Below the pieces are notes generated by a model that worked only from the letters and a program-made list of their open reading frames with translations, made no database searches and was not told the origin of the DNA. A program made the position numbers and the translations under genes. DNA of 64,000 bases from Macrostomum lignano (taxonomy: Eukaryota): positions 248,001 through 312,000 of the forward strand of contig NIVC01000237.1 in the NCBI GenBank assembly GCA_002269645.1, read 5' to 3'. Positions 1,694 to 48,952 of this stretch are shown here, in pieces (position 1 is the stretch's first letter; every line of letters begins with the position of its first letter).

Positions 1694-4600
1694 TCAAGCA
1701 AATTCCAATGGGTCTTGATCAGTTTTGGAGACGTGAAAAACCAGCGACGGCATGCGCTTGGCCAGGGCCGCAGCCGCTACGGGCAGGTAGGGTCGCTCGC
1801 AGTTTGAATGGCCTGTGACGATCACCGACCGGCCTTGGTCGGCGTGCCACAGCAGCTCGTGGTGCGACATCTCTCCAGTGAGCAGCAGGTCGCACTTGTC
1901 GCCGATGTCGCGTAGAAGAGAGGCGCCCGAGCCGGCGCATACGGCGACGCCTCTGGTCAGCTGGTGCTGCTGTCCGCTTGAGAGCGGCCTCACCACCTGG
2001 AAGGAAAATGAGTTACAAAAGCATTAGTCATATATACGTAATGCCTTTAGGTAGGTGGTACCGTCCTGCATATACCTAAACTGATCATCAGCACCTGACA
2101 ATGCTACAGCAGATATCATCAGCACCTGAAAATGCTACAGCAGGTATCATCAGCACCTGACAATGCTACAGCAAGGACTTCTAGACTAACAGGACGTAAA
2201 ACTCAAAGATCGTGCAATTTTTTGGAGGCCACGATTTCCTGGAAAAAATACACTGCGAAGATAGGAAAAAATCAGTTTTTCGTCACAAAATCTGTGATTG
2301 TATTTGATCTGGGGCAGTGAAGACTGCCATTCTTTTAATTTACCATGCACAATATGTTACTCTATTATATTTTCATATAGCTGTGTAGTGAAGTTTTCAT
2401 TTTCATATTGTTTTCACTTTATTTCATAAGCCCAAAGTTGCAAACTCACAAGTGGCATTAGCCGAACTTTTTGTGTTGTTCTTTTTAAAATAAAGTATAA
2501 AAACATTGCATGTAGGTACTCTTAGTCTTAAGCTATTATTGTAGGTTTAGTAACTATACTAATTCCTAGGCCTACTAGAACTAGACCTATCACTACACTA
2601 TCTAGCCTAATAAGTAATTAAATTTAGACAATGACTTAGAGATTAGTATATTTAGATTTTTTATTATATATAGATTACCAATAAATAGTTTCATATGGTT
2701 GGTTACCTAGGCTTGAGAAAGCTGTATTATCAGTTTTTAAGCCAAGCCTATATTTAGGACTAAGATTTAAGAAGAATAGACTTAATCACAAAAATAGGCC
2801 CTAACCATTTTTACTGGGTATCTATAAGAAAAAACATTGATTAGTCCTTTTATAACTTTTATTTTAAAGGCTAAAAATATTATTATATTACAAATTTGAA
2901 TAGCTTTTCTTTTCTTGAATTTGATATTTGGCTAATGCCACTTGTGAGTTTGCAACTTTGGGCTTATGAAATAAAGTGAAAACAATATGAAAATGAAAAC
3001 TTCACTACACAGCTATATGAAAATATAATAGAGTAACATATTGTGCATGGTAAATTAAAAGAATGGTAGTCTTCACTGCCCCAGATCAAATACAATCACA
3101 GATTTTGTGACGAAAAACTGATTTTTTCCTATCTTCGCAGTGTATTTTTTCCAGGAAATCGTGGCCTCCAAAAAATTGCACGATCTTTGAGTTTTACGTC
3201 CTGTTAGTCTAGAAGTCCTTGTGCTACAGCAGATATCAACAGCACCTGACAATGCTACAGCAGGCATCCTCAGCACCTGACAATGCTACAGCAGGTATCA
3301 TCAGCACCTGACAATGCTACAGCAGATATCAACAGCACCTGACAATGCTACAGCAGGCATCCTCAGCACCTGACAATGCTACAGCACAGTCTTAATTGAT
3401 ACCCACAAAGCCTACTGTCAGTAGTCAGACAAGAAACAAGCAGCAATTACGGCACTGGCCTGCAAATTCGCCAAGCCCAGGTGCTTTTTAACGGACTCGA
3501 CCGCTTCCTCGAGCGACATCGGAGTGCTAATCGGCGCCCATCGACCAGCGCCGGCGCCGGGCGTGTCTTTGCACGGCGTCACAGGCGCCGACTTGTTGAT
3601 CTCCAGCCAGCGGCCGAACGGGCCGGCCAGCAGCCAGTCGTTGAGGCCGTCCGGCCTGGCGTCCCAGGCGGTGTGCGGCGAATAGACTGCGACACCGTCG
3701 GCGAACGCGGCGGCCAGCAGGCGCTGCGGCCAGTCAGGCGAGGAGGCGAGCGCCCGCCGGAGCGGCCGGAACAGCGGCGGGTGGTAGGCGACGATGAGGT
3801 CGGCTTGGAGGCTTCGCGCCTCCTCGTAGACGCGCGACGTGAGATCGTTAGTGAGCACAACTGAGCTCACCAGCTTCTTGCCCTGTGCAATAAGGTCATT
3901 GCAAGGTCAGTTGGTTTATTTACCATGTCAAGTAATTGCAATTAGAGTTTAGCAGCTAAGGCCCACAGATATTAGAATTAGTAAATGGGCCACTCAGGCA
4001 CATATGCTTAGTAAAATAGCTTTCTACTTTCAGTTCAGTAGCAAAGAAGAATTTATAAGCTATTTTATAAGATTAAAGGCAGCTGAGATGACTTTGATAA
4101 GTTTACAAGCCCAAGCTTGCAGGCGTAAACAACTTGCTAATGCTAATTGGTTCAGGAATAATGTACATTGGCCTGTCCACTGAAATGTACATAGCAGCTT
4201 TAGGCTGGAACAACCGATGAAGGTAAAAAAATTGGGTGGTGGGGCAGGATGGTTCTGTGGGGAGTTTGAGGGTTTAAGGCAAGCTTCGGGAGGGGGGGGG
4301 GGGTTAAAAAGCCAATAACTAAGCCTTATCTTTAAAATTCCATTAAAATTCTTAGTTTAACTTAGGTCGTACTACTTGTACTTGAAACTACTGTAAGTAG
4401 TTTGCACGCAAATGTGCTGAGTGGCCCATCCAGTTATTCTAGTAGCTGTGGCTTAGACTGGATTTTGTTATAGTAGTATCCTGAATTTAGACCCTAAGAA
4501 GCCAATTCGGACCCAGGATTAGGGCTATTGTTAGGGAGGGACTGCAGTCAATTTGTGAATAAATAGCCCTAAGCCTAGCCCGATCAGGACAGCAGAGCCT

Positions 4601-4722
4601 GGATTTTATCTCACCAGCGCGAACTCTCTGGGCTCAATGAGCAGGCCCGCATTGTCCCAGTCCTCAGCCAGCCGACTGGGACAGAATTCCTCCAGCTGGG
4701 CCACAGCATCTCCCAGATTCAT
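1694..4722 (-). CDS. NIF3L1: NIF3-like protein 1 (NIF3/YbgI family), 3 exons, 280 aa from the first ATG
   Basis: Exons 4722-4615, 3882-3451, 1996-1694, all phase 0 with GT/AG. Family motifs LAEDWDNAGLL, LIVAYHPPLF, VYSPHTAWD, VAVCAGSG, LLTGEMSHH and GHSNCERPYL. Confidence 0.93.
2077..3385. repeat. 31-bp minisatellite (CATCAGCACCTGACAATGCTACAGCAGATAT) in NIF3L1 intron 2, split by the MITE
   Basis: Copies at ~2077-2171 and ~3222-3385. Confidence 0.85.
2172..3221. mobile_element. Non-autonomous long-TIR DNA transposon (MITE/foldback), probably P superfamily
   Basis: Inverted arms of 292 bp (2172-2463 and 2930-3221) starting CAAGG, 8-bp TSD TGCTACAG on both sides, AT-rich non-coding core. CANRG termini with a 7-8 bp TSD are typical of P elements. 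Confidence 0.85.
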
Positions 4723-6063
4723 GCCTGTCAAACGGCTGCTAATAGAGCTGAACGATCGAACGAGAATTGCAATGAAGGTGGCAGCGGCTGTCCAACCGGC
4801 GGGCTTCGTTCGGACTTGAACGCGGAGTCGTGCGGCAGCGACAAGCTTTAAGGTAAATTTTTATTAGTTGCAATTTTTTTAAAATGCGAAAAATATCCGC
4901 TGAATTTGTTGACATTTCTACTAGCAGTAGAGTGACTTGATGGTAGTTAGCTAGTTGCCCAGAGGGGGACTAAGTCGAGGCCAGTTTCTGTTTGCCTGCG
5001 TCAGTCAGCAAGAGTCACACACGCTGTCTGTGCACAGTCGTTTCTTTTCTGACGACATTTTTCAGGCTATGTGACAGATTTTACGGTTAGAATCTTTATA
5101 TGTCTACTTTTCTCAGTAGTCTAAATTGAAAACTCTCAAACAACGAATCCAAGAGTGCTAAAAAGCGCAAACCTACGTACTTACAGTAGAAAGGAACAAA
5201 TATTTTCTATAATCTAGAAAGCATCGGAGTGACTGTATTCGGTTTAGTAGAATCTACTTAAATTAATAAGAGTAATATGACGAGCTTGTAATTCTGTTTA
5301 GCCAAATACCATGCCGATAGGGTTACACTATTGGCTCGTATAACCAATTTGTATTCATTAACCAAGTAGTACTGAGAGAACTGTTTAAAACAGACAACAA
5401 AGGAGCAAATCACGAAAAAACACAACGAGTAATTATTTTTATTAATATAGAATTAATGAATACCGATTAAGGTAAGCTGAACGCTAATTGAACGTTTTAG
5501 AAACAGAAGGACAGTGTTAAACGCCTTATACTACTATATAAATAGGAGAATCGAGTAGTATATATTATTATTAGATAAGCGGACTTGCAAAATATTATAA
5601 GTTAAACAAAATCATTAAAAATCACAAGCACAAGCAGTGCACAGAAGCAATGGCAAAATAATTTATGATGTTACACTAAACAGGGCACAACAGTAGAAAT
5701 AAAATGGCCAATAAAAAGGGCAGGGTAAGCTTTGTTCTTCCAGTTCCAGTATAATAAAAATACTTGCTGCAAACAAAGTTGCAGTGTGGCGGTAAATAAC
5801 CAGACAGCGAGGGCGCTATAAAAGCTTTAAGCGGAATAAATACTTACTAATTACGAGTAATAAATAAAAACTGAGAAAAAACAAACTTCAGAGAAATAAA
5901 TATCGATTATTTATCAGTTGTGTTTAGTGTGACAGCTGCGTTAAACAGACAGGGGCCATCGTTGCTTGTTCGTTAGAGCTGTGATAAAATAGCTGTGCAG
6001 AGGCGCGGCAATTATAAATAAATAACTTGTTACAATAATGAACACATTAATAATGGTTGCAAA

Positions 6064-6520
6064 TCTATCAATCTAATCAATAAATATTTATTACTGGATT
6101 GCTAATCTATCCATCTATCTAATCAATATATATATTACTGGATTGCTAATCTATCCATCTATCTAATCAATATATATATATTACTGGATTGCTAATCTAT
6201 CCATCTATCTAATCAATATATATATATTACTGGATTGCTAATCTATCCATCTATCTAATCAATATATATATATTACTGGATTGCTAATCTATCCATCTAT
6301 CTAATCAATATATATATTACTGGATTGCTAATCTATCCATCTATCTAATCAAAATATTTATTACTGGATTGCTAATCTATCCATCTATCTAATCAATAAA
6401 TATTTATTACTGGATTGCTAATCTATCCATCTACCTAATCAATAAATATTTATTACTGGATTGCTAATCTATCCATCTATCTAATCAATAAATATTTATT
6501 ACTGGATTGCTAATCTATCC
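6064..6520. repeat. ~44-50 bp minisatellite with an internal variable (TA)n
   Basis: Unit CTAATCAAT[AAATATTTA or (AT)n]TTACTGGATTGCTAATCTATCCATCTAT, about 10 copies. Confidence 0.9.
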
Positions 6521-7029
6521 TTCAGAGCAATCTACACCCCAGTGCATAGCACTTTTGAGAGTTGCAGAGACAAAGCCATCATTTAAGCTTTAAAAGAAAT
6601 CAGTGCAAAAGTTAAAATTCTTGTGCAATACGAGAGTAATAAAGGATGTGAGAAGTTTTTTGAATAACTGTGGAGCTGTGGAGCAAAAAAAAATAAAATT
6701 GTAACAGAAAACAATCTTTCATACTCAGCCGTGTGACTCTGCAGCGATATAACAAAAAACAGTTGTGACGGTACATAGAAGCTCAAAGCACAAATTCTAC
6801 AAATAAAAAATTCTAGGATCTTTTAGGGACAAACAAAATATGAAATTGTTATTTTTGGTGATAAACACGCACCTGTCCGAACGCTCAAAAAGACCCGCAC
6901 GACAGCCTCACAGCAATGTCCCTAACAACGTTAACGAATTTCCAAAAGACTGCCTTCTAAAAAGCTTCATAAATATTATCTCTAAATAGTTTCAAAATAT
7001 TTTTTTAAACAAACCTTGAATAGCTTCTT

Positions 7030-7990
7030 CCCCTAGAAGCAGCTTTTCCTCAAAAACTGCTTCCCACAAAAACAGCTTTGATCAAAAACAGCTTCCATAA
7101 AAAACAGCCTACATCAAAAACAGCTTCCATAGAAAATAGCTTCCATAGAAAACAGCTTCCATCAAAACAGCTTCCATCAAAAACAGCTTCCATCAAAAAC
7201 TGCCGATACCAAAAACAGCTTCTATCAAAAACAGTCTATATCAAAAACAGCTTCCATCAAAAACAGCCGATATCAAAAACAGCTTCCATCAAAACAGCCT
7301 ATATCAAAAACAGCCTATATCAAAAACAGCCGATATCAAAAACAGCTTCCATCAAAAACAGCTTCCATCAAAAACTGCCGATACCAAAAACAGCTTCTAT
7401 CAAAAACAGTCTATATCAAAAACAGCTTCCATCAAAAACAGCCTATATCAAAAACAGCTTCCATCAAAAACAGCCGATATCAAAAACAGCTTCCATCAAA
7501 AACAGCCGATATCAAAAACAGGTTCCATCAAAACCAGCCGATATCAAAAACAGCTTCCATCAAAAACAGCTTCCATCAAAAACTGCCGATACCAAAAACA
7601 GCTTCTATCAAAAACAGTCTATATCAAAAACAGCTTCCATCAAAAACAGCCTATATCAAAAACAGCTTCCATCAAAAACAGCTTCCATCAAAAACAGCCG
7701 ATATCAAAAACAGCTTCCATCAAAAACAGCCGATATCAAAAACAGTTTCCATCAAAAACAGCCTATATCAAAAAACAGCTTCCATCAAAAACAGCCGATA
7801 TCAAAAACAGGTTCCATCAAAACCAGCCGATATCAAAAACAGCCGATATCAAAAACAGCTTCCATCAAAACCAGCCTATATCAAAAACAGGTTCCATCAA
7901 AACCAGCCTATATCAAAAACAGCTTCCATCAAAAACAGCCGATATCAAAAACAGCTTCCATCAAAAACAGCCGATATCAAAAACAGGTTC
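7030..7990. repeat. 16-17 bp minisatellite (AAAAACAGCTTCCATC / AAAAACAGCCGATATC)
   Basis: Tandem array; it generates the spurious 7078..8367 ORF. Confidence 0.9.
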
Positions 7991-8007
7991 CCTCAAACTT
8001 GGCCAAC

Positions 8008-11000
8008 TCAGGCCAGCAGATTTTCACTGGTCGGTCCAGACCGCCTTTTCGCGCCGGGCACGGCCGCTCCGCAGGGGATGCGGTCGGCCAGCAGGATCTG
8101 GACAGGGTGCGCGTAGGCGGCCAGAGCCAGGGCCAAACAGACCCAGTTGGCCGAGCTCAGCCCGCTGGCCTCGGCCAGGTCGAGCAGCGGGATCTGCACG
8201 AAGGACACCAAGCCGCAGGCCAGGCACATAACGCCGTACAGAGTGCCGAAATGGGCGGCCGGGAAGGCGGCGAACAGCAGGCAGGAGGCCAGAGAGAACA
8301 GCATGGATCTGTACAGAGCCAGCAGGGTGAACTGCAGCGGCACCAGGCCATCGTGGGCAGCGAATGACAGGCAGGAGAGCAGCAGGCCGAGACTGCACTG
8401 TAGCAGGAATGGCGCCTGCAAATTTTGTCGGGTAGACAAGCAGCATGGTTAGCTCAGAATGCGGAGCCTTGGGATACTTTCTTATCTTTGGATATTACAT
8501 GTATAGAATCTGGAATATTTCTGGTGACGAATGACTGGGATTATTCCCCTTGGGATTATGCGATTGTCGAGAAGATTGAACGGGCGGTACTGGGTGACGT
8601 TTACGCCCTGGCTCTCTTTCTTGACATTGTTGGCGCCTTCGACAACGTTATCTTTGAAGCGTTTCAGAGGGCCCTTCAAAATCGCAAAGCTCATGCTACC
8701 CTCATACGGTGGATCATGTACATGATCTCCAACCGTACGGTCACTGCTCAACTTCTTGGGCAAACTGCCTCCACCAGAGTCTGTAAGGGTGGACCCCAAG
8801 GCAGAGTCCTCACCCCGACGCTCTGGAACCTGGTCATGGACGCTCTTCTGAGTGACTCCCGACCCGACCCCGTCTTCAAAGTCGGGTATGCTGATGACGT
8901 CATGGCCATTGTGGCAGGACCGTCTCCCAGCACGCTCAGGGATCTGATGCAGAGCTTTATCCGCAAAGCAGAATCCTGGGCCAATGACAATGGTCTGGAA
9001 CTCTCTGAGCCCAAAACCGTTGCCATTATGTTTACCAGCAGACTACGCTGGAAAATACGTCCACTGCAGCTCTACGGCAGAGATATTGCCTTCGCGCACC
9101 AGACCAGATGTCTCGGGGTCACACTTGACCACCGGCTCAACTGGTCCTTCCACGTGAAAGCAAAAGCCAAGCGTGCCTCAGCCATCCTGGCCCAGCTCCG
9201 ACGAGCACTTGGCACTTCTTGGGGTCTATCCCCAAAGCGGCTTTGGTGGATCTATACTTCCGTAGTTAGACCTGCCATTACGTACGCCTCTGTTGTCTGG
9301 GTTAGCGCTACCCAGGTCAAAAGCCATGCAGACCTGCTCAACACGATCCAAGGCAGAGCGTGTAGGCTCATCTGCAAACGCCACCAGGTCCACGCCCTTT
9401 GCTGGCATGGGGGCCTTCCTTAATCTACCGCCTCTTGACCTCTTCGTCAGGGGTGAGGCGGCTAGAACGACGCGGCGTCTAATTGATGCCGGCGTCAAAT
9501 TCATTTACATGAGAGCACCTGCTAAGCGGAACCTTGTCCCGCATAGCGACCTGTGCCTCAACTTTCTCAACGAATGTCAGGCCAATCGCGTCTTCACCGA
9601 TCGCATTGCCTCAACGCTCAACCTGAGACAGCGCTACTCCGTAGCTATCGACTCGCGCGATAACATCAATGACCAATGGAACCTTGGTGAGCTTTATTGC
9701 TACACCGACGGTTCTAAGCAGTCAGCCAACACCGGCTTTGGTGTTGGAATCTTTCTGAACGGGAGGGTCATTGCTACCCACGCTCAATACACTGGGGTCA
9801 ACTCCAGTGTTTTCCAAAATGAAGTTCTGGCCATCAGCTCCTGCACTGCAGAGCTTCTCGCCACTGGCGTTACTGGTAAGAACATCATTTTCCATTCGGA
9901 CAGCCAAGCTGCCTTGCACGCCATCAGTGGCTGCAGCACCAACTCTGCTACAGTCCTCGACTGTATCAAACTCCTCAACGTGTTGGGTTCCACCAACAAA
10001 AGTACCCTTAAGTGGGTTCCGGGGCATGTGGGGATCCGAGGAAATGAGTTGGCTGACACCCTTGCAAAAGTTGGTGCCTCCGGCTCCTCTCTCGGTCCCG
10101 AACCCCTTGTCCCGATTCCTGGCTGTGTCATCGACTCGCGCATCAAAGCGTGGATCAGGACCCAACACCGCTCGACTTGGGCGAACTGCACGAACTGCAG
10201 GCAATCCAGAGGTGCTGTCCCTGAGCCCTCTCACCAGCTCCGGAAGCTCCTCTTGCGCCTCTCGCGCAGAGACATCCGGGCTGCCACCATGACCCTCTCT
10301 GGTCACGGCTGCTTCTCCAGGCACCAGTACCTGCAGGGCAACGCCACCAACGCCACCTGTAGTTTCTGCAACTCAGGTGACGAAACTGCTGAGCATTTCG
10401 TCAGCATCTGTCCCGCCTTCACGCGGGCCAGACTCACTTACCTCGGGCCACACACATCTATTACTGAAGCGTGCAAACCCGAAAACTTTAATCAGCTCAT
10501 GCGCTACCTTCGGGCCACCCGCTGGGCTAAACTCTCCTTTCCAGAGAGCACTATAGCTGCTGGCGACACTGGGGGACCTCCCTGGGCGGCGCCAACCCTC
10601 CGTCTATAGCGACGCGTCGGCCGTTCAGGGACTAGCGGAATGGGCGCCCGCGCCTTCCCGCTGTGTCCCCTCCGGGACAGCCCTGCAGCTAAGTCAAGTA
10701 AGTCAAATCCCCTTGAGATTATTCCCCTTGGGATTATTCCCCTTGGGATTATTCCCCTTGGGATTCTTTCCCTTGGGATTCTTCCCCTTGGGATTCTTCC
10801 CCTTGGGATTCTTCCCCTTGGGATTCTTCCCCTTGGGATTCTTCCCCTTGGGATTCTTCCCCTTGGGATTCTTCCCCTTGGGATTCTTCCCTTGGAATAA
10901 TTCCCCTTAGGAAATTCACCTTGGGACAATTCCGTTTAGGACAATTTCCCTTGGGATACTTCCCTTTGGGAAATTCCCCTTCAGAATATTCCCCTTAGAA

Positions 11001-13619
11001 TAATTCCCCTTACGCCTCGTACTTTTTATTGTGATATTTCCCTTGGGACAAATCAGCTCCTTGGAAATTCATTCCCCTTGGGATAATTCCCTTTGAAATA
11101 ACCCCCTTGGGATGATTCCCTTTGGGATACCCCCCTTGAGATAATTCCTCTTTCGTTATTTCACCTTGGGATAATTCCCCTTGAGATAATTCCCCTTGGG
11201 ATAATTCCCCCTAGGTTAATTCACCTTGGGATAATTCCCCTTAGGATAATTCCCCTTGGGATAATTTCCCTTGGGATAATCTTGGGATAATTTCCCTTGA
11301 GATAATTGGGACATTTCGGATCGAACTACGAGTAGGATAGAGTAATTAAAAGCATCTGCCAATGCCCAGTAAGCCGGTGCGCACCACAAGAAATCGGCAC
11401 CGCTGCCAGACGTCGGCGGCCGGTTTCGGCGGCCAGAATCGGCGAGAAAATCGAACTACGCCGACGGTGAAGAAGGCGAAGCAGAGGCCCAGCGACAAGA
11501 ACACGCCGAGCAGGCTGAGGTGCTGGACTATTGTCGGCGCGCGAAGCGACACGTCCGACACGCTGCCATCGACGGCGAAACGAACGTAGAGAGCCACCTG
11601 GTTGAGGAATACGAAGAAGCGCAGGATGGAGCAGACTGCCCAGATCACGTGACAGCCGAACATCCGGGTCAGCAGGACGGACTGCACCGGCGGCAGCTCG
11701 GCTGCCGGAGTCGCGGCGGCCGCGGCCTCGGCGGCTGCAGAGACTGAAAAAGGAGGCGTATCGATGCTGCAACCGGGGATCTCTTCTGGGTTGCAGGCCT
11801 GAACAGGAGATAGGAAACTCTCGGGAGGTATATGGGAAACTCTCACAGATTCGGTATGGGAAACTCTTACAGATTCGGTATGGGAAACTCTTACAGATTC
11901 GGTATGGGAAATCTCACAGATTCGGTATGGGAAAATCTCACAGATTCGGTATGGGAAAATCTCACAGATTCGGTATGGGAAAATCTCACAGATTCGGTAT
12001 GGGAAACTCTCACAGATTCGGTATGGGAAAATCTCTCAGATTCGGTATGGGAAAATCTCTCAGATTCGGTATGGGAAATTCTCACTGATACAGCTAATGT
12101 AACTAAATGATTTGAAGCTTTCAAACTCGAACTCACCATTCGCAGTAGTCTTAATCTCGATCTCCTTAGCAACAGGCTCCACCGCAGCGTCTAACGGTGT
12201 GACTTCGGAGTCGGCAGCGGCAGCCGCAGCGGCATCAGTGGTGGCAGCGTCGGCTGCTTCAGCGGGGTCGACAGGCGCCGCATCGGCGGCTACGGCCTGC
12301 CTCGGATCGTGCTCGAGCGGCTCCTTCAGTTCGAAGATCGCCTGTTTCGGACGCCGACGCTTGCGTGAGCAGGCGCTGAATGGATTGCACTCGCCGGCGA
12401 ACTGGTCGCCATGACGGATGTGATTGGGCGGCAGCAGCACCAGCCCGTTGACTAGGCAGACGGTGGCTGCCAGGCAGCCGAGGAACAGGAAGCAGGCCAG
12501 CCGACGGCGGTACATCGCCGAAGCGTCGTCCAGTCCGGTGCCATAGGCCACCGTCTGGATCAGAGTGAACACTACGGCGCTGCTGTCGAAGGTGCCGGAC
12601 ACCAAACAGATGAGGACCTGGCAGTGTAACTGAGCTCAATTAATTTGTTTGTCTACAAAGGTAAGCGGCTGGAGTAACTGTTTATTTAAATGCCTCGTCA
12701 GCTACTTAGTATTGGATTTTTTTTACACTTTTATACTTTTTTTACAATTAAAGACAGCTCTATGTCTGACTTTTTATTGCCTGCGAATCTCTAGGGGCCG
12801 TAAAGTCGTATTTGAGGCGTGTTTAGAGTTGCTGTAGAGTCACGGAGTAGCCTTTGAAGCGCATTTGCGTCGCATGATGAATTTGAGTCACATCTCTAGC
12901 GAAAGATAAGCGCCAACACAGCGACTCTTGAACGACTCTTTTGCGACTCTTTTACGATTCTGTAACTCACGTGACGCGCTTGAGACGCAACAGTCGCCTC
13001 TCCATCGCATTAGACGAGTTTGAGTCGTTAAAAAAAGTCAAAAGAGCTGCACAAGAGTCGCTCGACTCACAAGAGAGTTGTTTACAACGACTCTAGCTAT
13101 TCTTGTCATTTTCAACGGGTACAGAATCGAACCAGCACCCACCTCTCTCCAGGCCGGGAACAGTTCCGACACGCACAGGCTGCTGACAATTGAAACTGCG
13201 CTGGCCACAGCCCAGGAGGCGGCGCCAATGTAGAGCAGCCAGGCTGAGGCCGGGGTGGCAACGGCGAAGCACAGGCAGGTGAGAAAGCCGGCAGCAGCGC
13301 AGGCACACTTGCAGGCCCGCATGCCGGCCCTATCCAGCAGCAGGCCCATCGGCAGGGCGCACAGCAGCTGCATCCCGGTGCCCACAGCGTTCACCTGGGA
13401 GAAGCCCTCATTCTGACTGCGGCAGGTCTCGTTGCCGGAGGCAAGAACAGCCACCGAGACGTTGCAGCCGTCGGCGAAGAAGCCTTCGGCCAGCAGCAGC
13501 AGCCGCAGTGAGGAGGAAAACCCGTAGAACACGCCGCCTATGCAGAAGACCTCGCAGATGGCCAGGACCACCGCCAGGCCCGGCGTCCAGCGGCCAAGAA
13601 GGCGCTTTGGCTCCCAGCA
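8008..13619 (-). CDS. SLC43 (LAT3/LAT4)-like MFS transporter, 4 exons, ~574 codons, no ATG in the first exon
   Basis: Exons 13619-13143, 12617-12137, 11743-11385, 8415-8008 with consistent phases 0/1/0. TM1 CEVFCIGGVFYGFSS..LLAEGFFADGC, MGLLLDRAGMR, SGTFDSSAVVF and FPAAHFGTLYG match the SLC43 pattern. The 3' end may splice to a further exon at 6956-6873. Confidence 0.8.
8560..10706 (+). mobile_element. 5'-truncated non-LTR retrotransposon (RT + RNase H + CCHC knuckle; I group, LOA/Lian-like), frameshifted, antisense in a transporter intron
   Basis: RT motifs FLDIVGAFD, GGPQGRVLTP and YADD; RNase H YTDGSK, HSDSQAAL and WVPGH.GIRGNELAD; CSFC...ETAEHFVSICP. One extra A at 9376-9378 shifts the frame; stop at 10607-10609; 3' tail TAAGTCAAGTAAGTCAA; flanked by minisatellite units. 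Confidence 0.9.
10707..11310. repeat. 13-15 bp minisatellite (TTCCCCTTGGGATT[A/C])
   Basis: Tandem array; about 1.5 units also lie left of the LINE at 8537-8559. Confidence 0.9.
11831..12085. repeat. 23-24 bp minisatellite (ATGGGAAAATCTCACAGATTCGGT)
   Basis: About 10 copies filling most of the transporter intron 11744-12136. Confidence 0.9.
12770..13119. repeat. Dispersed intronic repeat, copy 1 (CGACTC/GAGTCG-rich)
   Basis: Three collinear blocks align with 41085-41327: GGGGCCGTAAA.TCGTAT.TGAGGCGTG; AAGCGC.AACACAGCGACTCT; GAGTTGTTTACA...ACGACTCT..AGCTATTCTT.TCA. Confidence 0.75.
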
Positions 13620-13644
13620 CTGCAATGGGAGTAGAGCGATGGTT

Positions 13645-15952
13645 AATTGTAGATTCAACTGCAGAGAGCTGTAGATTCTACTGCCGGGATCTGTAGATTC
13701 TACTGCAGGGAGTTGCAGATTCTACTGCCGGGATCTGTAGATTCTACTGCCGAGATCTGCAGATTCTACTGCCGGGATCTGCAGATTTTACTGCCGGGAT
13801 ATGCAGATTCTACTGCCGGGATCTGTAGATCCTACTGCCGAGATCTGCAGATTCTACTGCCGGGATCTGTAGATTCTACTGCAGAGAGTTGCAGATTCTA
13901 CTGCCGGGATCTGCAGATTCTACTGCCGGGATCTGCAGATTCTACTGCCGGGATCTGCAGATTCTACTGCCGGGATCTGTAGATTCTACTGTCGGGATCT
14001 GTAGATTCTACTGCCGGGATCTGTAGATTCTACTGTCGGGATCTGTAGATTCTACTGCAGAGATCTGTAGATTCTACTGCCGGGATATGTAGATTCTACT
14101 GCAGGGATCTGTAGATTCTACTGTCGGGATCTGTAGATTCTTCTGCAGAGATCTGTAGATTCTACTGCCGGGATATGTAGATTCTACTGCAGAGATCTGT
14201 AGATTCTACTGTCGGGATCTGTAGATTCTACTGTCGGGATCTGTAGATTCTACTGTCGGGATCTGTAGATTCTACTGCCGGGATCTGTAGATTCTACTGT
14301 AGGGATCTGTAGATTTTACTGTCGGGATCTGTAGATTCTACTGCAGAGATCTGTAGATTCTACTGTCGGGATCTGTAGATTCTACTGCAGGGATATGTAG
14401 ATTCTACTGCCGGGATCTGTAGATTCTACTGTCGGGATCTGTAGATTCTACTGCAGGGATATGTAGATTCTACTGCCAGGATCTGTAGATTCTACTGTCG
14501 GGATCTGTAGATTCTACTGCAGGGATCTGTAGATTCTACTGCCAGGATCTGTAGATTCTACTGTCGGGATCTGTAGATTCTACTGCCGGGATCTGTAGAT
14601 TCTACCGTCGGGATCTGTAGATTCTACTGCAGAGATCTGTTGATTCAACTGTCGGGATCTGTAGATTCTACTGCCGGGATCTGTAGATTCTACTGTCGGG
14701 ATCTGTAAATTCTACTGCCAGGATCTGTAGATTCTACGGTCGGGATCTGTAGATTCTACTGCCGGGATCTGTAGATTCTACTGTCGGGATCTGTAGATTC
14801 TACTGCCGGGATCTGTAGATTCTACTGCCGGGATCTGTAGATTCTACTGTCGGGATCTGCAGATTCTACTGCAGAGATCTGTAGATTCTACTGCCGGGAT
14901 CTGTAGATTCTACTGCAGAGATCTGTAGATTCTACTGCCGGGATCTGTAGATTCTACTGCCGGGATCTGCAGATTCTACTGCCGGGATCTGTAGATCCTA
15001 CTGCAGAGAGTTGCAGATTCTACTGCCAGGATCTGTAGATTCTACTGCAGAGAGTTGCAGATTCTACTGCCGGGATCTGCAGATTCTACTGCCGGGATCT
15101 GCAGATTCTACTGCCGGGATCTGTAGATTCTACCGCAGAGATCTGTAGATTCTACTGCCGGGATCTGTAGATTCTACTGCCGGGATCTGTAGATTCTACT
15201 GCAGAGATCTGTAGATTCTACTGCCGGGATCTGTAGATTCTACTGCCGGGATCTGTAGATTCTACTGTCGGGATCTGTAGATTCTACTGTCGGGATCTGT
15301 AGATTCTACTGCCGGGATCTGTAGATTCTACTGTCGGGATCTGTAGATTCTACTGCAGGGATCTGTAGATTCTACTGCAGAGATCTGTAGATTCTACTGT
15401 CGGGATCTGTAGATTCTAATTCTACTGCAGGGATCTGTAGATTCTACTGTCGGGATCTGTAGATTCTACTGTCGGGATCTGTAGATTCTACTGTCGGGAT
15501 CTGTAGATTCTACTGTCGGGATCTGTAGATTCTACTGTCCGGATCTGTAGATTCTACTGTCGGGATCTGTAGATTCTACTGCAGAGATCTGTAGATTCTA
15601 CTGTCGGGATCTGTAGATTCTACTGCCGGGATCTGTAGATTCTACTGCCGGGATCTGTAGATTCTACTGCAGATATCTGTAGATTCTACTGTCGGGATCT
15701 GTAGATTCTACTGCAGGGATCTGTAGATTCTACTGCCGGGATCTGTAGATTCTACTGCAGGGATCTGTAGATTCTACTGTCGGGATCTGTAGATTCTACT
15801 GTCGGGATCTGTAGATTCTACTGCAGGGATCTGTAGATTCTACTGCCAGGATCTGTAGATTCTACTGTCGGGATCTGTAGATTCTACTGCAGGGATCTGT
15901 AGATTCTACTGCCAGGATCTGTAGATTCTACTGTCGGGATCTGTAGATTCTA
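13645..15952. repeat. 22-bp minisatellite (GGGATCTGTAGATTCTACTG[C/T]C), roughly 100 copies
   Basis: Occupies almost the whole gap between the EIF2B1 3' end and the first acceptor of the transporter gene. Confidence 0.95.
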
Positions 15953-16135: not shown

Positions 16136-17854
16136 TCACAGATACAGCTTAGTCAGCTCGTCGCTAACAGCCGACGGCGGCACAATGCCAATATCGGTGA
16201 ACAGCAGTTTGAGATACTGTGGCGGAGTGTAATCGGTGATTGGAGAGCGGCATTGGCCGCCAGACTTCGTCCGGGTCCGCTCGGCCGAGGCCGGGTAGCG
16301 CAGCTCCAAGTCCAGATCGGCCTGGTTTAGCGGATAGGCTCGCAAGAATTTGCAGCTCTCGGCCAGCACGTAGACTGGCACGTTGAGAGCGTGGGCGCAC
16401 AGGCACACGGTGTAGGTGCCAATCTTGTTAACAATGCCGCCGCTCTGTGTGACAGCCTCTGCCCCTAGTAGAACCATATCCACCCGCTCAAGCGCTACCC
16501 CAACCTCGGCGTCCAGCACTAGCGAGGCGTTGATGCCGGCTTGTTGAAGGTCGGCCAGCATTCGCTCCCCGGATTTGTCTGGCAGAGACTGCGTCACCGT
16601 GCACTGGAAGTCTAGCTGCGCTTTGGCCGCTCGCTTTAGCAGGGCCAGAACCACCTTGGAGCTGCGCGGGAGGTGGGGCGAATGTGGGTTATAAGTACAC
16701 TGCGTCTGCGATCCGCTTGGAGACGCTTAGACAGGAGGTTAGACTGGGAATAGACACAGGTTTGATTGGGGTTAGATAGAGGGTAGATTGGGGTTAGACA
16801 GGGGTTAGATTGGGGTTAGACAGAGGGTAGATTGGGGTTAGACAGGGATTAGATTGGGGTTAGACAAGGGGTAGATTAGGGTTAGACAGGGGTTAGATTG
16901 GGGTTAGACAAGGGGTAGATTAGGGTTAGACAGGGGTTAGATTGGGGTTAGACAAGGGGTAGATTAGGGTTAGACAGGGGGGTAGATTAGGGTTTGACAG
17001 GGGATTAGATTGGGGTTAGGCGGGGTGGATTGGGGTTAGACAGAGGGGGCGGGTAGATTAGGGTTAGACAGAGGGTGTTGGTAGATTAGGGTTAGACAGG
17101 GGATTAGATTGGGGTTAGATAGGGGGTAGATTGGGGTTAGATAGGGGGTAGTTTGGGGTTAGATAGGGGGTAGATTGGGGTTAGAAAGAGGGGGCGGGTA
17201 GATTAGGGTTAGACAGGGGATTAGATTGGGGTTAAATTGGGGTTAGACTGGGTTAGGCAGGCAGGGGGTAGATTGGTGTTAGACAGAGGGGGCTAGGATA
17301 TGAATAGACATCTAGAGTAGTCTAATTATCTAGACTATTGTGAGTAGACAAGTAGTCTCCTGATCAACTCTGAGTAGACAAGTGTTACACAGTGGTTCGA
17401 CATGGAAGGAAAGCAGACTCATAGAAGGGGGCTAAACGCAGTCAGCTGGAACTCACCGCGAATGCAGCAGCACCCTAGTGCCATGATTAATAAACGGCAA
17501 GGCCATACTCATAATCCTATCCAGACTCTGTCTAATTCTGCTCAAAAAATTCTCGCCCCGACTAATGAGCACCCGGCGGGTGTCATCAAAGCGAGGCTGG
17601 TCCAGCTCAGTCATGGTGATGTAGCGGAGGAACAGCTCGCCGCCAGACCGCACAGACGCATTGGCTAGGTGTGATCGCATCAGCTCATTATTTGTCTCCA
17701 CTATTTTCTCGCGCACCTCAGTCACGGTCTGAGCCTCTTCAGACTGTTGGATGACTGCAATTAGAGTTTGAATTTGGGCCTCAACGGCCGATTTGTCTTC
17801 CTCTGCGCCCATCAACCGATTGAACATTTCTAGCGGGCTCTCTGCACTGCCCAT
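16136..17854 (-). CDS. EIF2B1: Translation initiation factor eIF2B subunit alpha, 2 exons, 307 aa
   Basis: Exons 17854-17457 and 16661-16136 (phase 2). Motifs SVRSGGELFLRYIT, VLLHSRSKVV, VLLGAEAVTQSGGIVNKIGT, YVLAESCKF, DYTPPQYL.LLFTDIG and PSAVSDELTKLYL. Confidence 0.95.
16740..17300. repeat. G-rich degenerate minisatellite (GATTGGGGTTAGACAGGGGGTA) in the EIF2B1 intron
   Basis: Tandem G-rich units, some containing TTAGGG. Confidence 0.85.
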
Positions 17855-17899: not shown

Positions 17900-20800
17900 G
17901 AGTCCAAGGATTACAACTGGAGAGCATGCATTGATTTAAAATTTAGAAAACTGCTTCAGTTTGAGGTCAGTTTATTAATTAACAAAAAGTTTTTTATGCT
18001 TCTCTAACTATCTTATAGTACTTACAAGGGAGAAAGTAAAAAAGTAATTTTGCCCCTGATTCAAGCAGCAAATTAAATATTTAAGCCAAACTTCTCTTCT
18101 ATTTGTCAGTTTAATTCAAGTAATTAGCTCAAAGCAGGCCTTTTTTATTGGATCCAAGAGTTCAAGGCCAACTAGAAGGCCATTGAAGATGTCAAGTGCT
18201 GACTGAGGACAACAGAGCTGAGATGGTAGCTGATGTACTTCAAGCAGTTGAAAGAACTAGTGTGTGACCAGGTGTGACTAGTGACACTGCTGCTGAGGAA
18301 TGGAGCATCTCTCATGACAGCATTTTTCTGAACCCAATGGATGACTTGGGCCTAAGCAAGCTCAGCTCAGTGAGTGCACATTGAACCTGTTCAATGATCT
18401 CGATGCCAATGCTGAAGATTCTTTATCAGATACTCACAGCCAGTGACTGGTGTCCCAGTGATGAGAATTGGATTATACCATATATAGTACTTTAATATGG
18501 ACCTGCTAGACCTTTATTCTAGACCTTTCAATTTGGACTTTCTTAAAATATACTAAAAAACTTTTGTATTTATATTTAGTTCAAAATTTGTTAGTAATAA
18601 CTTGAAATTATACTAATATTATCAATGGAAGTTAGAAAAAATGTCTTACTATTTAAAAAGGACAAGCTATTTTTTGACTTGCTAAGATTTATTGATCAGA
18701 TCTCTATGGAATACTTGCTGTTGGCTATTATGTTTTAATAATTTGACATTTAATATGAGTGACTTAATATGACTTACATGTAGACTAATCTATAGCCATA
18801 TGATTTGCTTTGTTTTAATAATAATTAGGCCTATATAAGTTTATAATAATTAGTTTAATACTATTAATCAATTCGTACTATTATTACTATTTTCTAATAG
18901 TATGTACTATTTGCTAAGTATATTTCTCCCAGCCAATATAAAGTATGCATAGTCTTTTCTGCTTGTTTATTTCTCTCCATGTACATGCTAAGCATTTAGT
19001 TAGAGCCACAAGGTAAATTTTGTTGTTTAGGCCATAGAATAATCTGATTGGCTAGGCCTATTTTAACAAGTACTGTATTTTATGCATGCTAGAGACAGTT
19101 GAGCCACTTAAGTTGTCTGATCCCCCTGACTTTGTATTATAGGTTGGCAACTATAATGAAAGTTAGTATATAAACCCAAACTAGAAGATTGGCTTTTTGA
19201 CTGTTATTACAATATTTCTAATTATATTTGTGATAGTATCAAATTTGTTCAAATACTTTATGGATTATTTGAGCATAGCATTTGTGACTTTTTAATGTAA
19301 TATTGATTAATTAACCTGATATATTCATATCTAATGTAATCAATACTTAATTTTGTTATAATTGTATCTCAAAATGAATATTTTGAAGCATATTAATTGT
19401 GTCTATTTTTGGCTGCATCTTCCTACGCGGGCTCTTAGCATTGTCTTATGACCAATCACAATCATAAAAAGTTTCTAGCATATTATATGCTAGACCAAAG
19501 GCCCAAGTGTTAATCATATATTGTGGTTGATTACTACAGAACTACTGCTCCTTTGGATTGTAAAGCAGCTGTTAATTAAAAAAAATAAATTATAAATTCT
19601 TAGCTAAAACTTAAACAAAACATACTGTACAACTACTGCTTATTCCGTCATAACATTATTATATTTTTTCATAACTTTTTAGGTAGCCAAGGTATTTATT
19701 GCAAATATGCTTTATTAACAATGCTTTGTTAATTGGCTATATTTTATAGCATTAAATACTATAGCTATTTAGATTTTCAAAACTTTTAATCTTAAAGTGG
19801 GGACTATATAATATTAATAATAAAGGATAAACTATAAAAATATTCTATTTTAACATATAATATACACAAAGCAAAGAATACTTAAATTAAAAAAATACAA
19901 ATGGTCATATTTTTATATCAAAATAGATTAGATTTATTTATTTTCTATTTTAAATCAAAGTAAACATTTTTGTAAAAGTCCTTTGACTTACTAGACAATA
20001 TATATACAAAAGGCAAATTGTAAAAAAGGTAGGTTTTTAGCAAATAAATAACTTTGCAATATAATTTTATATCTTGTTTAATAAAATAAAAAGCAAATTC
20101 TAGAAAGAAAACTTTTATAGGCCTAAATAAAACTATATAAATATATATTTAGCTTTAGCCTAACAAACTATATTATCTTTTTAATTAAGCATAAGACATT
20201 AAAAAACTGTGATATTTAAAAAAGAAACTTCTGTATTTTAATATTGAAAAAGTAAGTTATAAGCATAAAAATCTATAATTCCCTATAAAATACTTAGCAA
20301 ATATATTAAACTATTCTTTCCAATTCTTAACCAATCTTACATATACATTATACAATATATAGACCCTACTTTAAAAGTCCAATATGCTAGAATTTTCTTA
20401 GTTCTTCATTTCATAGTTTATTGGTATGCATATTTGGCATGCTTAAATCCTAAAGTCCCATTTCTATATTGAAAGGTAGAACATTTTGAAGAAAAAGATA
20501 AGTAGTTAATAGGTAATAAAATGCAAACAAATAAAAATTAGGCCTTAATATTAATAATTGAAGGTGATAGTGCTATTTCAAATAATTTAGGTATTAGAAC
20601 TTGGTAGGCCCCTGCCGCCCCTAGGCCCTAATTGCAAGTTGTTCAAAAGGTTAGATTTCCAACTTTTTACTTGGCATAAACCTAAAATTTTGCCCAAGAA
20701 ACTCTGGTAGGCCCTATACATTGGATAGTACATCTTTTTGACAGTGGATTATATTTATTACAAGACTCACTCAAAAGGAAAAAGAAATTGATTTGTAACT

Positions 20801-48301: not shown

Positions 48302-48952
48302 CTGAAGAGATTCAAGCGGCCATTGCAATTCAGGTGTTCAGTATATTTTGACCTTAGCCATAAAATGGAAGACCTCAGGCTAAAGCAGGTGTTTTCTACT
48401 GTAGGCAAAAATGGCGTCCTTCTAAATCACAATATTTATGGTTAGTTGTAACCATAAGAACAGTTTTTGCATACATTTTCATAGCTACTACAGATAGCTA
48501 TTTTACCATAAGTTGTAGTCATAATTACAGCAAAACAAAAAATTCTTCCTTGTACAATAACAAATTTTGCTACAATATTACTAAACAGTTGTTTTACCAT
48601 ATCATTGATATAAATTAAAAATAGAATACTAATGTAGTGAGTCGCTATTTAGTTAGGCGCCGCACTAGTCAGCTGTTTCCCTCGCCCTCGCCCCAGGCTT
48701 CTGTCTGCCGCTGGGCAGTTGCCTGTCCCTTCCCGCCTGTCCTCTGGCCTGTCCCTTGCCCGTTTGTCCTCGTTTGCCTCTTTTTTGTCTCGTGTTCTCG
48801 TTTTGCAGTGCCCAGACAGCTTGGTCTGGCCTGCCTCTGTTTCGTTCTCTGTTTGGCATCTCCAAATTTGGAGTGCCGTTCTGTTTTCCGGTCCCAAGGT
48901 CACGAGTGCCTTCACTTGTGGGCCTTTTTACCTCTTGTCATGTGAGCCAGTC

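What the first reader, a model, noticed from the sequence alone, without database searches (positions are those of the whole stretch)
4720..4870. NIF3L1: an SL-AUG would create a 41-aa mitochondrial-presequence-like extension
Seen: an acceptor-like site with a CTAAT branch motif (..CAACTAATAAAAATTTACCTTAAAG|, exon from 4845) lies exactly 123 nt, in frame and stop-free, upstream of the ATG at 4722, with an in-frame TAA just upstream of the acceptor. The extension LVAAARLRVQVRTKPAGWTAAATFIAILVRSFSSISSRLTG has 6 basic and no acidic residues and contains RSF|SS, the R-3 type mitochondrial processing motif. It has no ATG. Established: NIF3 proteins have been reported in mitochondria. Inference: an SL-supplied AUG makes a mitochondrial isoform while the internal ATG makes a cytosolic one.
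Basis: partly seen in the sequence, partly recalled or inferred. Interest (0 to 1): 0.85.

Follow-up and report, generated by a model that had tools for sequence, protein, structure and literature searches.

The report
Flatworm NIF3L1 presequence lacking its own ATG
In the flatworm Macrostomum lignano, one copy of the NIF3L1 gene keeps the conserved N-terminal targeting-like extension found in other animals but has no start codon for it, and the most likely source of that start codon is the AUG at the end of the trans-spliced leader, a mechanism already known in flatworms.

Summary
On the minus strand, AAG|CTT (exon from 4845) lies 123 nt upstream of ATG 4722, in frame, stop-free and ATG-free, with an in-frame TAA at 4863-4861.

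The window is M. lignano Mlig_3_7 (NIVC01000237.1), gene Mlig002832.g2. The species' spliced leader (SL) ends in ...TTGCATG.

- Animal NIF3L1 orthologs carry a basic, acid-poor extension that starts ML and ends at an internal Met. It has a recurrent R-x-F motif 9-13 residues before that Met. The flatworm stretch (VRSFSS at -12) fits this, so it is probably homologous coding sequence.
- In the paralog (g3), the six bases just before CTTGTC read TGCATG, the last six bases of the SL. The assembly was polished with RNA-seq, so this is probably an imprint of SL-spliced reads at exactly this junction. The eIF2B-alpha and MFS-like neighbours show the same pattern.

Four findings count against:
- No junction read was seen.
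- The GenBank CDS for g2 starts at 4827.
- The acceptor is weak.
- g3 has a TAA at the tenth extension codon (eleventh counting the leader's Met).

Mitochondrial import is untested, and the hydrophobic centre of the extension leaves other destinations open.

Verdict: a probable new member of a known kind.

The parts
4863..4867 (-). CTAAT branch-point-like motif, 18 nt upstream of the AG. It is conserved in the paralog.
4861..4863 (-). In-frame TAA that closes the reading frame just upstream of the acceptor.
4846..4848 (-). AAG, the proposed spliced-leader (SL) trans-splice acceptor, with AG at 4847-4846. The paralog L001 reads TGCATG here, which equals the last 6 nt of the SL.
4723..4845 (-). 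41-codon ATG-less extension (LVAAARLRVQVRTKPAGWTAAATFIAILVRSFSSISSRLTG). It is homologous in architecture to the N-terminal presequence-like extension of animal NIF3L1.
4750..4758 (-). Codons for R-S-F, followed by S-S (4749-4744). This is an R-3-type processing motif. R-x-F recurs 9-13 residues before the core Met in fish and crustacean orthologs.
4720..4722 (-). First genomic ATG (context GGCATGA). It is the start of the Pfam DUF34_NIF3 domain and aligns with the start of bacterial homologs.
4615..4845 (-). Exon 1 of NIF3L1 (Mlig002832.g2) as proposed. The GenBank partial CDS begins at 4827. The donor is GTGAGA, starting at 4614.
3460..3882 (-). Exon 2. A GC donor after CAG (exon end 3460) is used in the GenBank proteins. 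An alternative GT donor 9 nt downstream (exon end 3451) adds Ala-Ser-Ala.
1694..1996 (-). Exon 3, including the TGA stop codon.
5033..5233 (-). Block about 200 nt long with a single difference from the paralog. It contains TATAAAG (5100-5094) and a GTAAGT (5184-5179). It may be the promoter and the start of the outron (the 5' segment removed by trans-splicing); this is inferred only.
13619..13625 (-). Calibration case. The neighbouring MFS-like gene has TTGCAG|TGC..., an open frame and no genomic ATG, so SL-ATG plus TGC TGG GAG reads in frame. Its public CDS starts 3 nt after the junction.
17925..17930 (-). Calibration case. TGCATG (the SL 3' end) lies directly before CTCTCC, 71 nt upstream of the eIF2B-alpha ATG (17854). 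The paralog has TATTGCATG, 9 nt of the SL, at the same place.

Best explanation
The 123-nt stretch is the real N-terminal, presequence-like coding extension of M. lignano NIF3L1 (copy g2). This copy has no genomic start codon for it. The pre-mRNA is trans-spliced at AAG|CTT (4846|4845) to the 35-nt spliced leader (SL), whose last three bases, AUG, fall in frame. Translation from that AUG gives Met plus 41 residues plus the NIF3 core (319 or 322 aa, depending on the exon-2 donor).

The SL AUG sits in a weak context (U at -3, C at +4). The genomic AUG at 4722 has G at -3 and A at +4. Leaky scanning, or any mRNA that is not trans-spliced, would therefore yield the core-only protein (277 or 280 aa).

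The long form is probably sorted to mitochondria and cut after R-S-F. The short form probably stays in the cytosol.

What is shown: the sequence anatomy, the identity of the organism and of its SL, the architectural match to orthologs, and the SL-derived hexamer in the paralog.

What is inferred: trans-splicing of this particular copy, use of the SL AUG, and the destination of the long form.
For: 1. Identity. The window matches NIVC01000237.1 of Mlig_3_7 at 100%. The SL is CGGTCTCTTACTGCGAAGACTCAATTTATTGCATG.

2. Orthologs. Of 118 NIF3 homologs with the WDNxG anchor, 56 have an extension of at least 12 residues before the core and another 56 have 3 residues or fewer. All the named animal NIF3L1 proteins fall in the first group, and the Nif3-like proteins named as bacterial in the second. 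The animal extensions typically start ML, have 3-8 basic and 0-1 acidic residues, and end at an internal Met. Many carry R-x-F 9-13 residues before that Met: QRSFSS and SNSRSF in a fish and two unnamed homologs, ARTFH in crabs. The flatworm stretch has 42 residues counting the Met, 6 basic, 0 acidic, and VRSFSS at -12. Pfam DUF34_NIF3 starts at residue 43, the internal Met.

3. SL imprint.
- The paralog L001 reads TGCATG|CTTGTC where the window reads TTAAAG|CTTGTC. All three differences convert the hexamer into the SL 3' end.
- TGCATG occurs at only 3.3e-4 per position locally.
- Local divergence at the site is 17%, against 2.4% in the extension.
- The assembly was polished with Pilon using STAR-mapped RNA-seq.
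- The same signature occurs at the eIF2B-alpha 5' UTR: 9 nt of the SL in L001 and 6 nt in the window, neither with an AG.
- It also occurs at the MFS-like gene: AG in the window, TG in L001, where the public CDS starts exactly at the junction.
- In an unbiased scan, 1 of 4 substitution clusters in 11.8 kb of aligned sequence was the eIF2B-alpha SL site.

4. Position. 4845 is the most upstream AG from which an SL AUG reads through to the NIF3 core.

5. Precedent. Use of the SL AUG as initiator in flatworms is established (Cheng et al. 2006, as cited in PMC9851317 and PMC12582326).
Against: - No RNA read or cDNA across the junction could be examined.
- The public 5'-partial CDS of this copy (PAA87308.1) begins at 4827, with no AG in front. 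The annotators' SL-read pipeline therefore did not cut at 4845.
- The acceptor is AAG with 47% pyrimidines upstream, not [T/C]TNCAG.
- The imprint is seen in g3, not in this copy, so it proves SL splicing for the gene family rather than for g2.
- g3 carries TAA at the tenth extension codon. The extension is therefore dispensable in at least one copy.
- All three substitutions between the copies in the extension change the protein, one of them to a stop.
- GC3 of the extension is 0.54, against 0.79 for the CDS.
- The codon-usage log-odds score is -0.6. In-frame CDS windows score +11 to +15 and non-coding windows about -14.5.
- The helical hydrophobic moment of the first 30 residues is low (0.32). 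The 12-residue hydropathy maximum of 2.06 is the second highest among orthologs. That would also fit a signal-anchor or a bipartite signal.
Confidence: 0.55

Rival explanations
1. Decaying relic. The ancestral gene had a genomic ATG at 4848-4846 followed by the presequence. After the recent duplication, this copy lost the ATG (ATG to AAG) and the other copy gained a nonsense codon. The stretch is now an untranslated 5' leader, and both copies make only the core protein from ATG 4722.
For: - The paralog has an ATG exactly at that position and a TAA 10 codons later.
- All three substitutions in the extension are non-synonymous or nonsense.
- GC3 and codon-usage scores for the extension are weak.
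- The public CDS of the paralog starts at the internal ATG.
Against: - The paralog's ATG comes embedded in TGCATG, the exact 3' end of the SL. It differs from the window by three clustered changes, all towards the SL.
- The same signature occurs at two neighbouring genes.
- The assembly was polished with RNA-seq. The ATG in the paralog is therefore probably not genomic.
Confidence: 0.17
2. Ordinary 5' UTR. Transcription starts about 30 nt downstream of the A/T-rich CTAATAAAAATTT element, near 4830-4840. There is no trans-splicing, and the frame is open by chance.
For: - The public transcript and CDS start at 4827-4829 with no AG in front.
- 42% of GC-matched segments are stop-free.
- The acceptor is weak.
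Against: - The composition together with the R-x-F motif at the orthologous distance from the core Met is rare by chance (0.5% of stop-free segments). It also matches orthologs across animals.
- GC content jumps from 35% to 58.5% exactly at 4845.
- The paralog carries the SL hexamer at the junction.
Confidence: 0.1
3. The extension is translated, but from a near-cognate codon (in-frame AAG 4848, ACG 4809-4807, or an ATT) on mRNA that is not trans-spliced.
For: In-frame near-cognate codons exist, and there is no upstream ATG in any frame. This rival otherwise rests on general knowledge of non-AUG starts for organellar isoforms.
Against: No evidence is specific to this idea. The organism has a ready AUG donor, and the paralog shows the SL signature.
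Confidence: 0.04
4. The start mechanism is as in the best explanation, but the long form goes elsewhere: the ER or a membrane (signal peptide or signal-anchor), or the mitochondrial inner membrane or intermembrane space via a bipartite signal, rather than the matrix.
For: - WTAAATFIAILV has a mean Kyte-Doolittle hydropathy of 2.06 over 12 residues, against an ortholog median of 0.63.
- The basic segment ARLRVQVRTKP is amphipathic at 170 degrees (1.12).
- The best 11-residue window at 100 degrees scores 0.66 and lies further along the extension (VRSFSSISSRL).
- The helical moment of the first 30 residues is only 0.32.
- The Musca ortholog has a transmembrane-like N-terminus.
Against: - Most orthologous extensions look like classical presequences.
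- NIF3L1 is listed among MitoCarta2.0/MitoCarta+ genes.
- An R-3 motif is present.
Confidence: 0.14

Closest known systems
[quoted passage not shown]
   Same: The SL ends in AUG. The acceptor is placed so that this AUG is in frame. There is no genomic ATG for the N-terminal coding sequence. The region upstream of the first genomic ATG is homologous to coding sequence in orthologs.
   Different: The species is different (a free-living macrostomid). The junction is inferred here, not sequenced. The segment that depends on the SL AUG is a whole sorting-signal-like extension followed by a second usable AUG, so two products with different destinations are possible.
Animal NIF3L1 with a genome-encoded N-terminal extension and an internal Met at the core start (fish, amphibian, bird, crustacean and insect orthologs)
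   Same: The architecture is the same: it starts ML, is basic and acid-poor, has R-x-F about 9-13 residues before the internal Met, and is followed by the DUF34_NIF3 domain.
   Different: Those orthologs have their own ATG. This copy has AAG at that position. The flatworm protein also lacks the roughly 100-residue insert found in most of the aligned animal orthologs.
Dual localisation through alternative SL addition sites in trypanosomes (Nilsson et al. 2010, cited in PMC9851317; further details are from my own knowledge)
   Same: Trans-splicing decides whether an N-terminal targeting peptide is part of the translated ORF.
   Different: In trypanosomes, two acceptor sites include or exclude a genomic AUG. 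Here a single site would supply the AUG itself.
Schistosoma mansoni phytochelatin synthase: mitochondrial and cytosolic variants from one gene (PMC3101182)
   Same: A flatworm gene yields a predicted mitochondrial form and a cytosolic form that differ by an N-terminal leader.
   Different: That gene achieves this by alternative cis-splicing, and no trans-splicing was detected.

Membership tests
NIF3 / NIF3L1 (Pfam PF01784, DUF34_NIF3; YbgI-type dinuclear metal centre proteins) | Full-length match to the Pfam domain above the curated cut-off | tested here: met
   Score 181.7 bits against a cut-off of 23.4. Residues 43-315 cover profile positions 1-256 of 256. PF01784 is also precomputed for P0001.
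NIF3 / NIF3L1 (Pfam PF01784, DUF34_NIF3; YbgI-type dinuclear metal centre proteins) | Conserved metal-site residues and motifs (WDN.G, YHPP, SPHT, GEMSHH, HS..ER) | tested here: met
   These are invariant columns in a 20-sequence alignment that includes bacterial members.
Flatworm mRNAs initiated at the spliced-leader AUG | The species' SL ends in AUG | tested here: met
   The SL sequence is given in PMC8629364. The organism was identified by a 100% match to NIVC01000237.1.
Flatworm mRNAs initiated at the spliced-leader AUG | An AG acceptor in frame, an open reading frame from the junction, and no genomic ATG upstream of conserved coding sequence | tested here: met
   The acceptor is a weak AAG.
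Flatworm mRNAs initiated at the spliced-leader AUG | The stretch between the junction and the first genomic ATG is homologous to N-terminal coding sequence of orthologs | tested here: met
   Architecture and R-x-F motif shared with animal orthologs. This is architectural rather than alignable sequence identity.
Flatworm mRNAs initiated at the spliced-leader AUG | cDNA or RNA-seq reads joining the SL to this exon start | tested here: inconclusive
   No reads are available. Indirect evidence comes from the SL hexamer at the junction in the paralog, with parallels at two neighbouring genes. The public CDS of this copy starts at 4827.
Mitochondrial matrix presequence cleaved by the mitochondrial processing peptidase | Net positive charge, no acidic residues, rich in Ala, Ser, Thr, Leu and Arg | tested here: met
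   6 basic and 0 acidic residues; A8, S5, R5, T4, L4.
Mitochondrial matrix presequence cleaved by the mitochondrial processing peptidase | Amphipathic alpha-helix near the N-terminus | tested here: inconclusive
   The helical moment is 0.32 in the first 30 residues, against a typical 0.5-0.8 in orthologs. The best helical window is VRSFSSISSRL (0.66). The basic part is amphipathic at 170 degrees. These are my own heuristics, not a trained predictor.
Mitochondrial matrix presequence cleaved by the mitochondrial processing peptidase | R-2, R-3 or R-10 cleavage motif | tested here: met
   R-S-F|S-S.
Mitochondrial matrix presequence cleaved by the mitochondrial processing peptidase | Import into mitochondria, or prediction by TargetP or MitoFates | not testable with these tools
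   No predictor or experiment is available here.

The most novel reading that the evidence does not exclude
Trans-splicing is the only source of the start codon for a conserved organellar presequence. The fraction of NIF3L1 sent to mitochondria would then be set by SL addition and by leaky scanning past the weak SL AUG. After the recent genome duplication, the two copies have divided the roles: g2 can make the long and short forms, while g3, with a stop after 10 codons, makes only the core protein behind a 10-codon SL-initiated upstream ORF.
Probability: 0.35. Interest if true: 0.6.

Novelty: new member of a known kind. Interest (0 to 1): 0.45.

Why it matters
What SL trans-splicing does for genes outside operons is still debated. 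A conserved sorting signal that can only be translated after SL addition would be a clear functional case. M. lignano is the flatworm with stable transgenesis, so reporter fusions with and without the acceptor could test it directly.

There is also a practical point for users of the Mlig_3_7 reference. SL-derived bases appear to have been written over the last 2-9 nt upstream of trans-splice junctions in this assembly. This erases AG acceptors and creates false genomic ATGs. It can mislead acceptor-motif statistics, start-codon annotation and comparisons between paralogs.

Tried and rejected
- **Rfam scan of the window.** It gave no hits, so there is no SL RNA gene here.
- **Search for a third gene copy to polarise the differences.** A protein search with the MFS-like first exon found nothing at E<=1e-20, which is unexplained because the protein is listed as a called gene. 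The eIF2B-alpha search returned only the two known loci.
- **Window-wide scan for SL 3'-end matches.** It was not enriched over shuffled leaders. The SL signature is significant only because of where it sits: at the predicted junction and at annotated 5' ends.
- **Codon usage and GC3.** The values were intermediate between coding and non-coding, so they are not decisive.
- **Cis-splicing from the upstream GTAAGT (5184).** The upstream frame has TAG at 5256-5254 and no in-frame ATG, so it cannot supply a start.
- **Exact-match scans of metagenome contigs.** Neither the SL-exon junction nor the exon start was found.
- **Literature and supplement searches for Mlig002832.** None were found.
- **Schistosome phytochelatin synthase as a precedent for an SL-made mitochondrial isoform.** Rejected, because that case uses cis-splicing.

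Full report
**1. What is at the coordinates**

- CTAAT lies at 4867-4863.
- The in-frame TAA lies at 4863-4861.
- TTAAAG ends at 4846.
- 41 codons follow (4845-4723) with no stop and no ATG in any frame.
- ATG lies at 4722.

The gene has three exons:
- exon 1 runs from 4845 (or the ATG at 4722) to 4615;
- exon 2 runs from 3882 to 3460, or to 3451 with an alternative donor;
- exon 3 runs from 1996 to 1694.

It encodes a NIF3-family protein. Pfam DUF34_NIF3 scores 181.7 bits and starts at the internal Met.

**2. Whose gene it is**

The best protein hits are Macrostomum lignano NIF3-like proteins. The cluster holds two GenBank entries:
- PAA91338.1 (Mlig002832g3, 277 aa), which starts at the internal Met;
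- PAA87308.1 (Mlig002832g2, 312 aa, flagged as partial), which begins LRVQVRTKPAGW..., inside the extension.

The locus fetched for PAA87308.1 is 100% identical to the window. The window therefore corresponds to NIVC01000237.1:248001-312000 of assembly Mlig_3_7.

The species has one spliced leader (SL), CGGTCTCTTACTGCGAAGACTCAATTTATTGCATG. About 30% of its genes are trans-spliced, and the top acceptor motif is [T/C]TNCAG (PMC8629364). Use of the flatworm SL AUG as initiator is established (Cheng et al. 2006, cited in PMC9851317 and PMC12582326). Authors working on Macrostomum also note that the final ATG of the SL is a likely start codon (PMC10468722).

**3. Is the open frame meaningful?**

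Not on its own. 42% of GC-matched 123-nt segments are stop-free, and the other two frames of the stretch stay open for 38 and 34 codons.

Codon statistics sit in between coding and non-coding:
- GC3 is 0.54, against 0.79 for the CDS;
- the codon log-odds score is -0.6, against +11 to +15 for true coding windows and about -14.5 for non-coding windows.

Comparison with orthologs changes the picture. Of 118 homologs with the WDNxG anchor, 56 start within 3 residues of the core and 56 have an extension of 12 residues or more. The Nif3-like proteins named as bacterial are in the first group and all the named animal NIF3L1 proteins are in the second. The animal extensions have these features:
- they typically start ML;
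- they carry 3-8 basic and 0-1 acidic residues;
- they end at an internal Met aligned with window ATG 4722;
- many carry R-x-F 9-13 residues before that Met. Examples are ...QKQRSFSSHQPLLSGR|MDL in a fish, ...SNSRSFKTLPPLA|MDL in an unnamed homolog, and ...ARTFHCRHYS|MEL in a crab.

The flatworm stretch is (M)LVAAARLRV...LVRSFSSISSRLTG|MNL, which has the same design. Among stop-free null segments, only 0.5% combine no acidic residues, at least 6 basic residues and R-x-[FYL]-[SA].

I conclude that the stretch is, or very recently was, coding sequence homologous to the NIF3L1 N-terminal extension. It is not a 5' UTR that happens to be open.

**4. Where would its start codon come from?**

The paralogous locus (L001, contig NIVC01000089.1, copy g3) was aligned to the window. 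The extension differs at 3 of 123 positions. One difference is CAA to TAA at the tenth extension codon.

The 25 nt upstream of the junction differ at 4 of 24 aligned positions, a local hot spot. The hexamer just before CTTGTC is TTAAAG in the window and TGCATG in L001. All three hexamer differences convert it into the last six bases of the SL.

The Methods of the genome paper state that the Canu assembly was polished with Pilon using Illumina DNA reads and RNA-seq mapped by STAR. The transcriptome work in the same paper used end-to-end alignment (PMC5730564). Reads that begin with a few SL bases would then be forced across the junction. Where RNA coverage exceeds DNA coverage, they could overwrite the genomic bases.

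**5. The same signature at the two neighbouring genes**

- eIF2B-alpha: 71 nt upstream of its ATG, L001 reads TATTGCATG|CTCTCC (9 SL bases) and the window reads TGCATG|CTCTCC (window 17930-17925). The flanks are almost identical, the differences cluster just 5' of the junction, and neither copy has an AG.
- MFS-like gene: the window has a textbook acceptor, CCCATTGCAG|TGCTGG. L001 has ...TTGCTG|TGCTGG, in which the -2 base equals the SL base. The public 5'-partial CDS in L001 starts exactly at TGC. In the window copy, SL-ATG plus TGC TGG GAG is in frame with an ORF that has no genomic ATG, so this is a likely second SL-AUG gene.
- An unbiased scan for substitution clusters found 4 in 11.8 kb of aligned sequence. 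One was the eIF2B-alpha site. The NIF3L1 site narrowly missed the flank filter.

A window-wide search for SL-like 3' ends is not enriched over shuffled leaders. The argument therefore rests on position, not on abundance.

My reading is that these are imprints of SL-spliced reads. They mark real junctions, including |CTTGTC of NIF3L1. True cDNA-mediated conversion would lead to the same inference about the mRNA.

**6. What remains against**

- The imprint is in g3, not in the window copy.
- The public g2 CDS starts at 4827-4829, not at 4845. The annotators' TBONE pipeline, which cuts transcripts at SL-read peaks, therefore did not place a site there for g2. This fits low coverage, but it also fits a conventional start near 4830-4850, downstream of the A/T-rich CTAATAAAAATTT.
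- The acceptor is AAG with a weak pyrimidine tract.
- g3 cannot make the long form. Its SL AUG would open a 10-codon upstream ORF.
- No third copy or outgroup could be reached to determine which state is ancestral.

**7. Function of the extension**

The composition and the R-S-F|S-S motif fit a mitochondrial presequence. NIF3L1 is among the genes cross-referenced to MitoCarta2.0/MitoCarta+ (PMC8385132).

My simple measures are less clear:
- the helical moment of the first 30 residues is low, at 0.32;
- the basic segment is amphipathic as a beta strand;
- WTAAATFIAILV is the second most hydrophobic 12-mer among the orthologous extensions.

A bipartite signal or a signal-anchor cannot be excluded.

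The SL AUG has a poor context (UUGCAUGC). The internal AUG has G at -3 and A at +4. One trans-spliced mRNA could therefore give both products by leaky scanning. This last point is inference.

**8. Verdict**

It would be a new member of a known kind, the SL-AUG-initiated flatworm ORFs. Its distinguishing feature is that the SL-dependent part is a conserved sorting-signal-like extension.

Direct junction reads and localisation experiments are still needed.

Noticed in passing
window 17925-17930 (minus strand); L001 828-836, 3774-3779 and 9872-9877: Bases identical to the 3' end of the spliced leader (2-9 nt) sit directly upstream of the likely trans-splice junctions of three neighbouring genes. 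They replace the expected AG, and their extent differs between the two paralogous contigs. The cause is probably Pilon polishing of Mlig_3_7 with RNA-seq. If this is general, it erases acceptors and creates false ATGs across the reference.
   Followed up: partly
window 13619-13625 (minus strand); gene 13616-8008: An MFS-like gene (573 aa called) has a perfect TTGCAG| acceptor, an open frame and no genomic ATG. SL-ATG plus TGC TGG GAG is in frame, so it is a likely SL-AUG-initiated gene. A protein search with its first exon found nothing at E<=1e-20, although the protein is listed as a called gene.
   Followed up: partly
window 3451-3460 (minus strand): NIF3L1 exon 2 has two donors 9 nt apart. 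A GC donor (CAG|GCCAGT) is used in the GenBank proteins. A GT donor adds Ala-Ser-Ala and is used in a UniRef model (A0A1I8HYS4).
   Followed up: no
window 5033-5233 (minus strand): A block of about 200 nt upstream of NIF3L1 has a single difference from the paralog, so it is more conserved than the exons. It contains TATAAAG (5100-5094) and a consensus donor GTAAGT (5184-5179). It could be a promoter, or an unannotated 5' exon or RNA.
   Followed up: no
window 2180-3390 (NIF3L1 intron 2): A large inverted duplication (about 3240-3000 against 2460-2180) is flanked by 31-nt tandem repeats (TGCTACAGCAGGTATCATCAGCACCTGACAA). It looks like a foldback or MITE-type insertion, and most of it is absent from the paralog's intron.
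   Followed up: no
window 8425-10609 (plus strand): Reverse-transcriptase and RNase H ORFs of a non-LTR retrotransposon are inserted in an intron of the MFS-like gene. They are absent from the paralog.
   Followed up: no
window 13648-15952: A 22-nt tandem array with 104 copies (TGTAGATTCTACTGCCGGGATC) lies between the eIF2B-alpha and MFS-like genes. Several other micro- and minisatellite arrays occur at 1-216, 6063-6524, 7046-7997, 10708-11307, 11831-12089 and 16727-17286.
   Followed up: no
window 47072-48330 (minus strand): An F-box gene has an ORF that is open for about 107 codons upstream of its first in-frame ATG. An SL-like ATTGCAATG sits at its 5' end (48330-48320), but out of frame. 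It may be another SL-AUG gene with an indel near the junction.
   Followed up: partly
window 29200-32450: Long proline- and glycine-rich tandem-repeat ORFs are open on both strands. They appear to lie within a gene whose flanking exons resemble an ionotropic glutamate receptor.
   Followed up: no
window 49225-50157 and 53325-54746 (plus strand): A retroelement reverse-transcriptase ORF and an intact 473-aa ORF that looks like a transposase by eye. The family was not checked.
   Followed up: no
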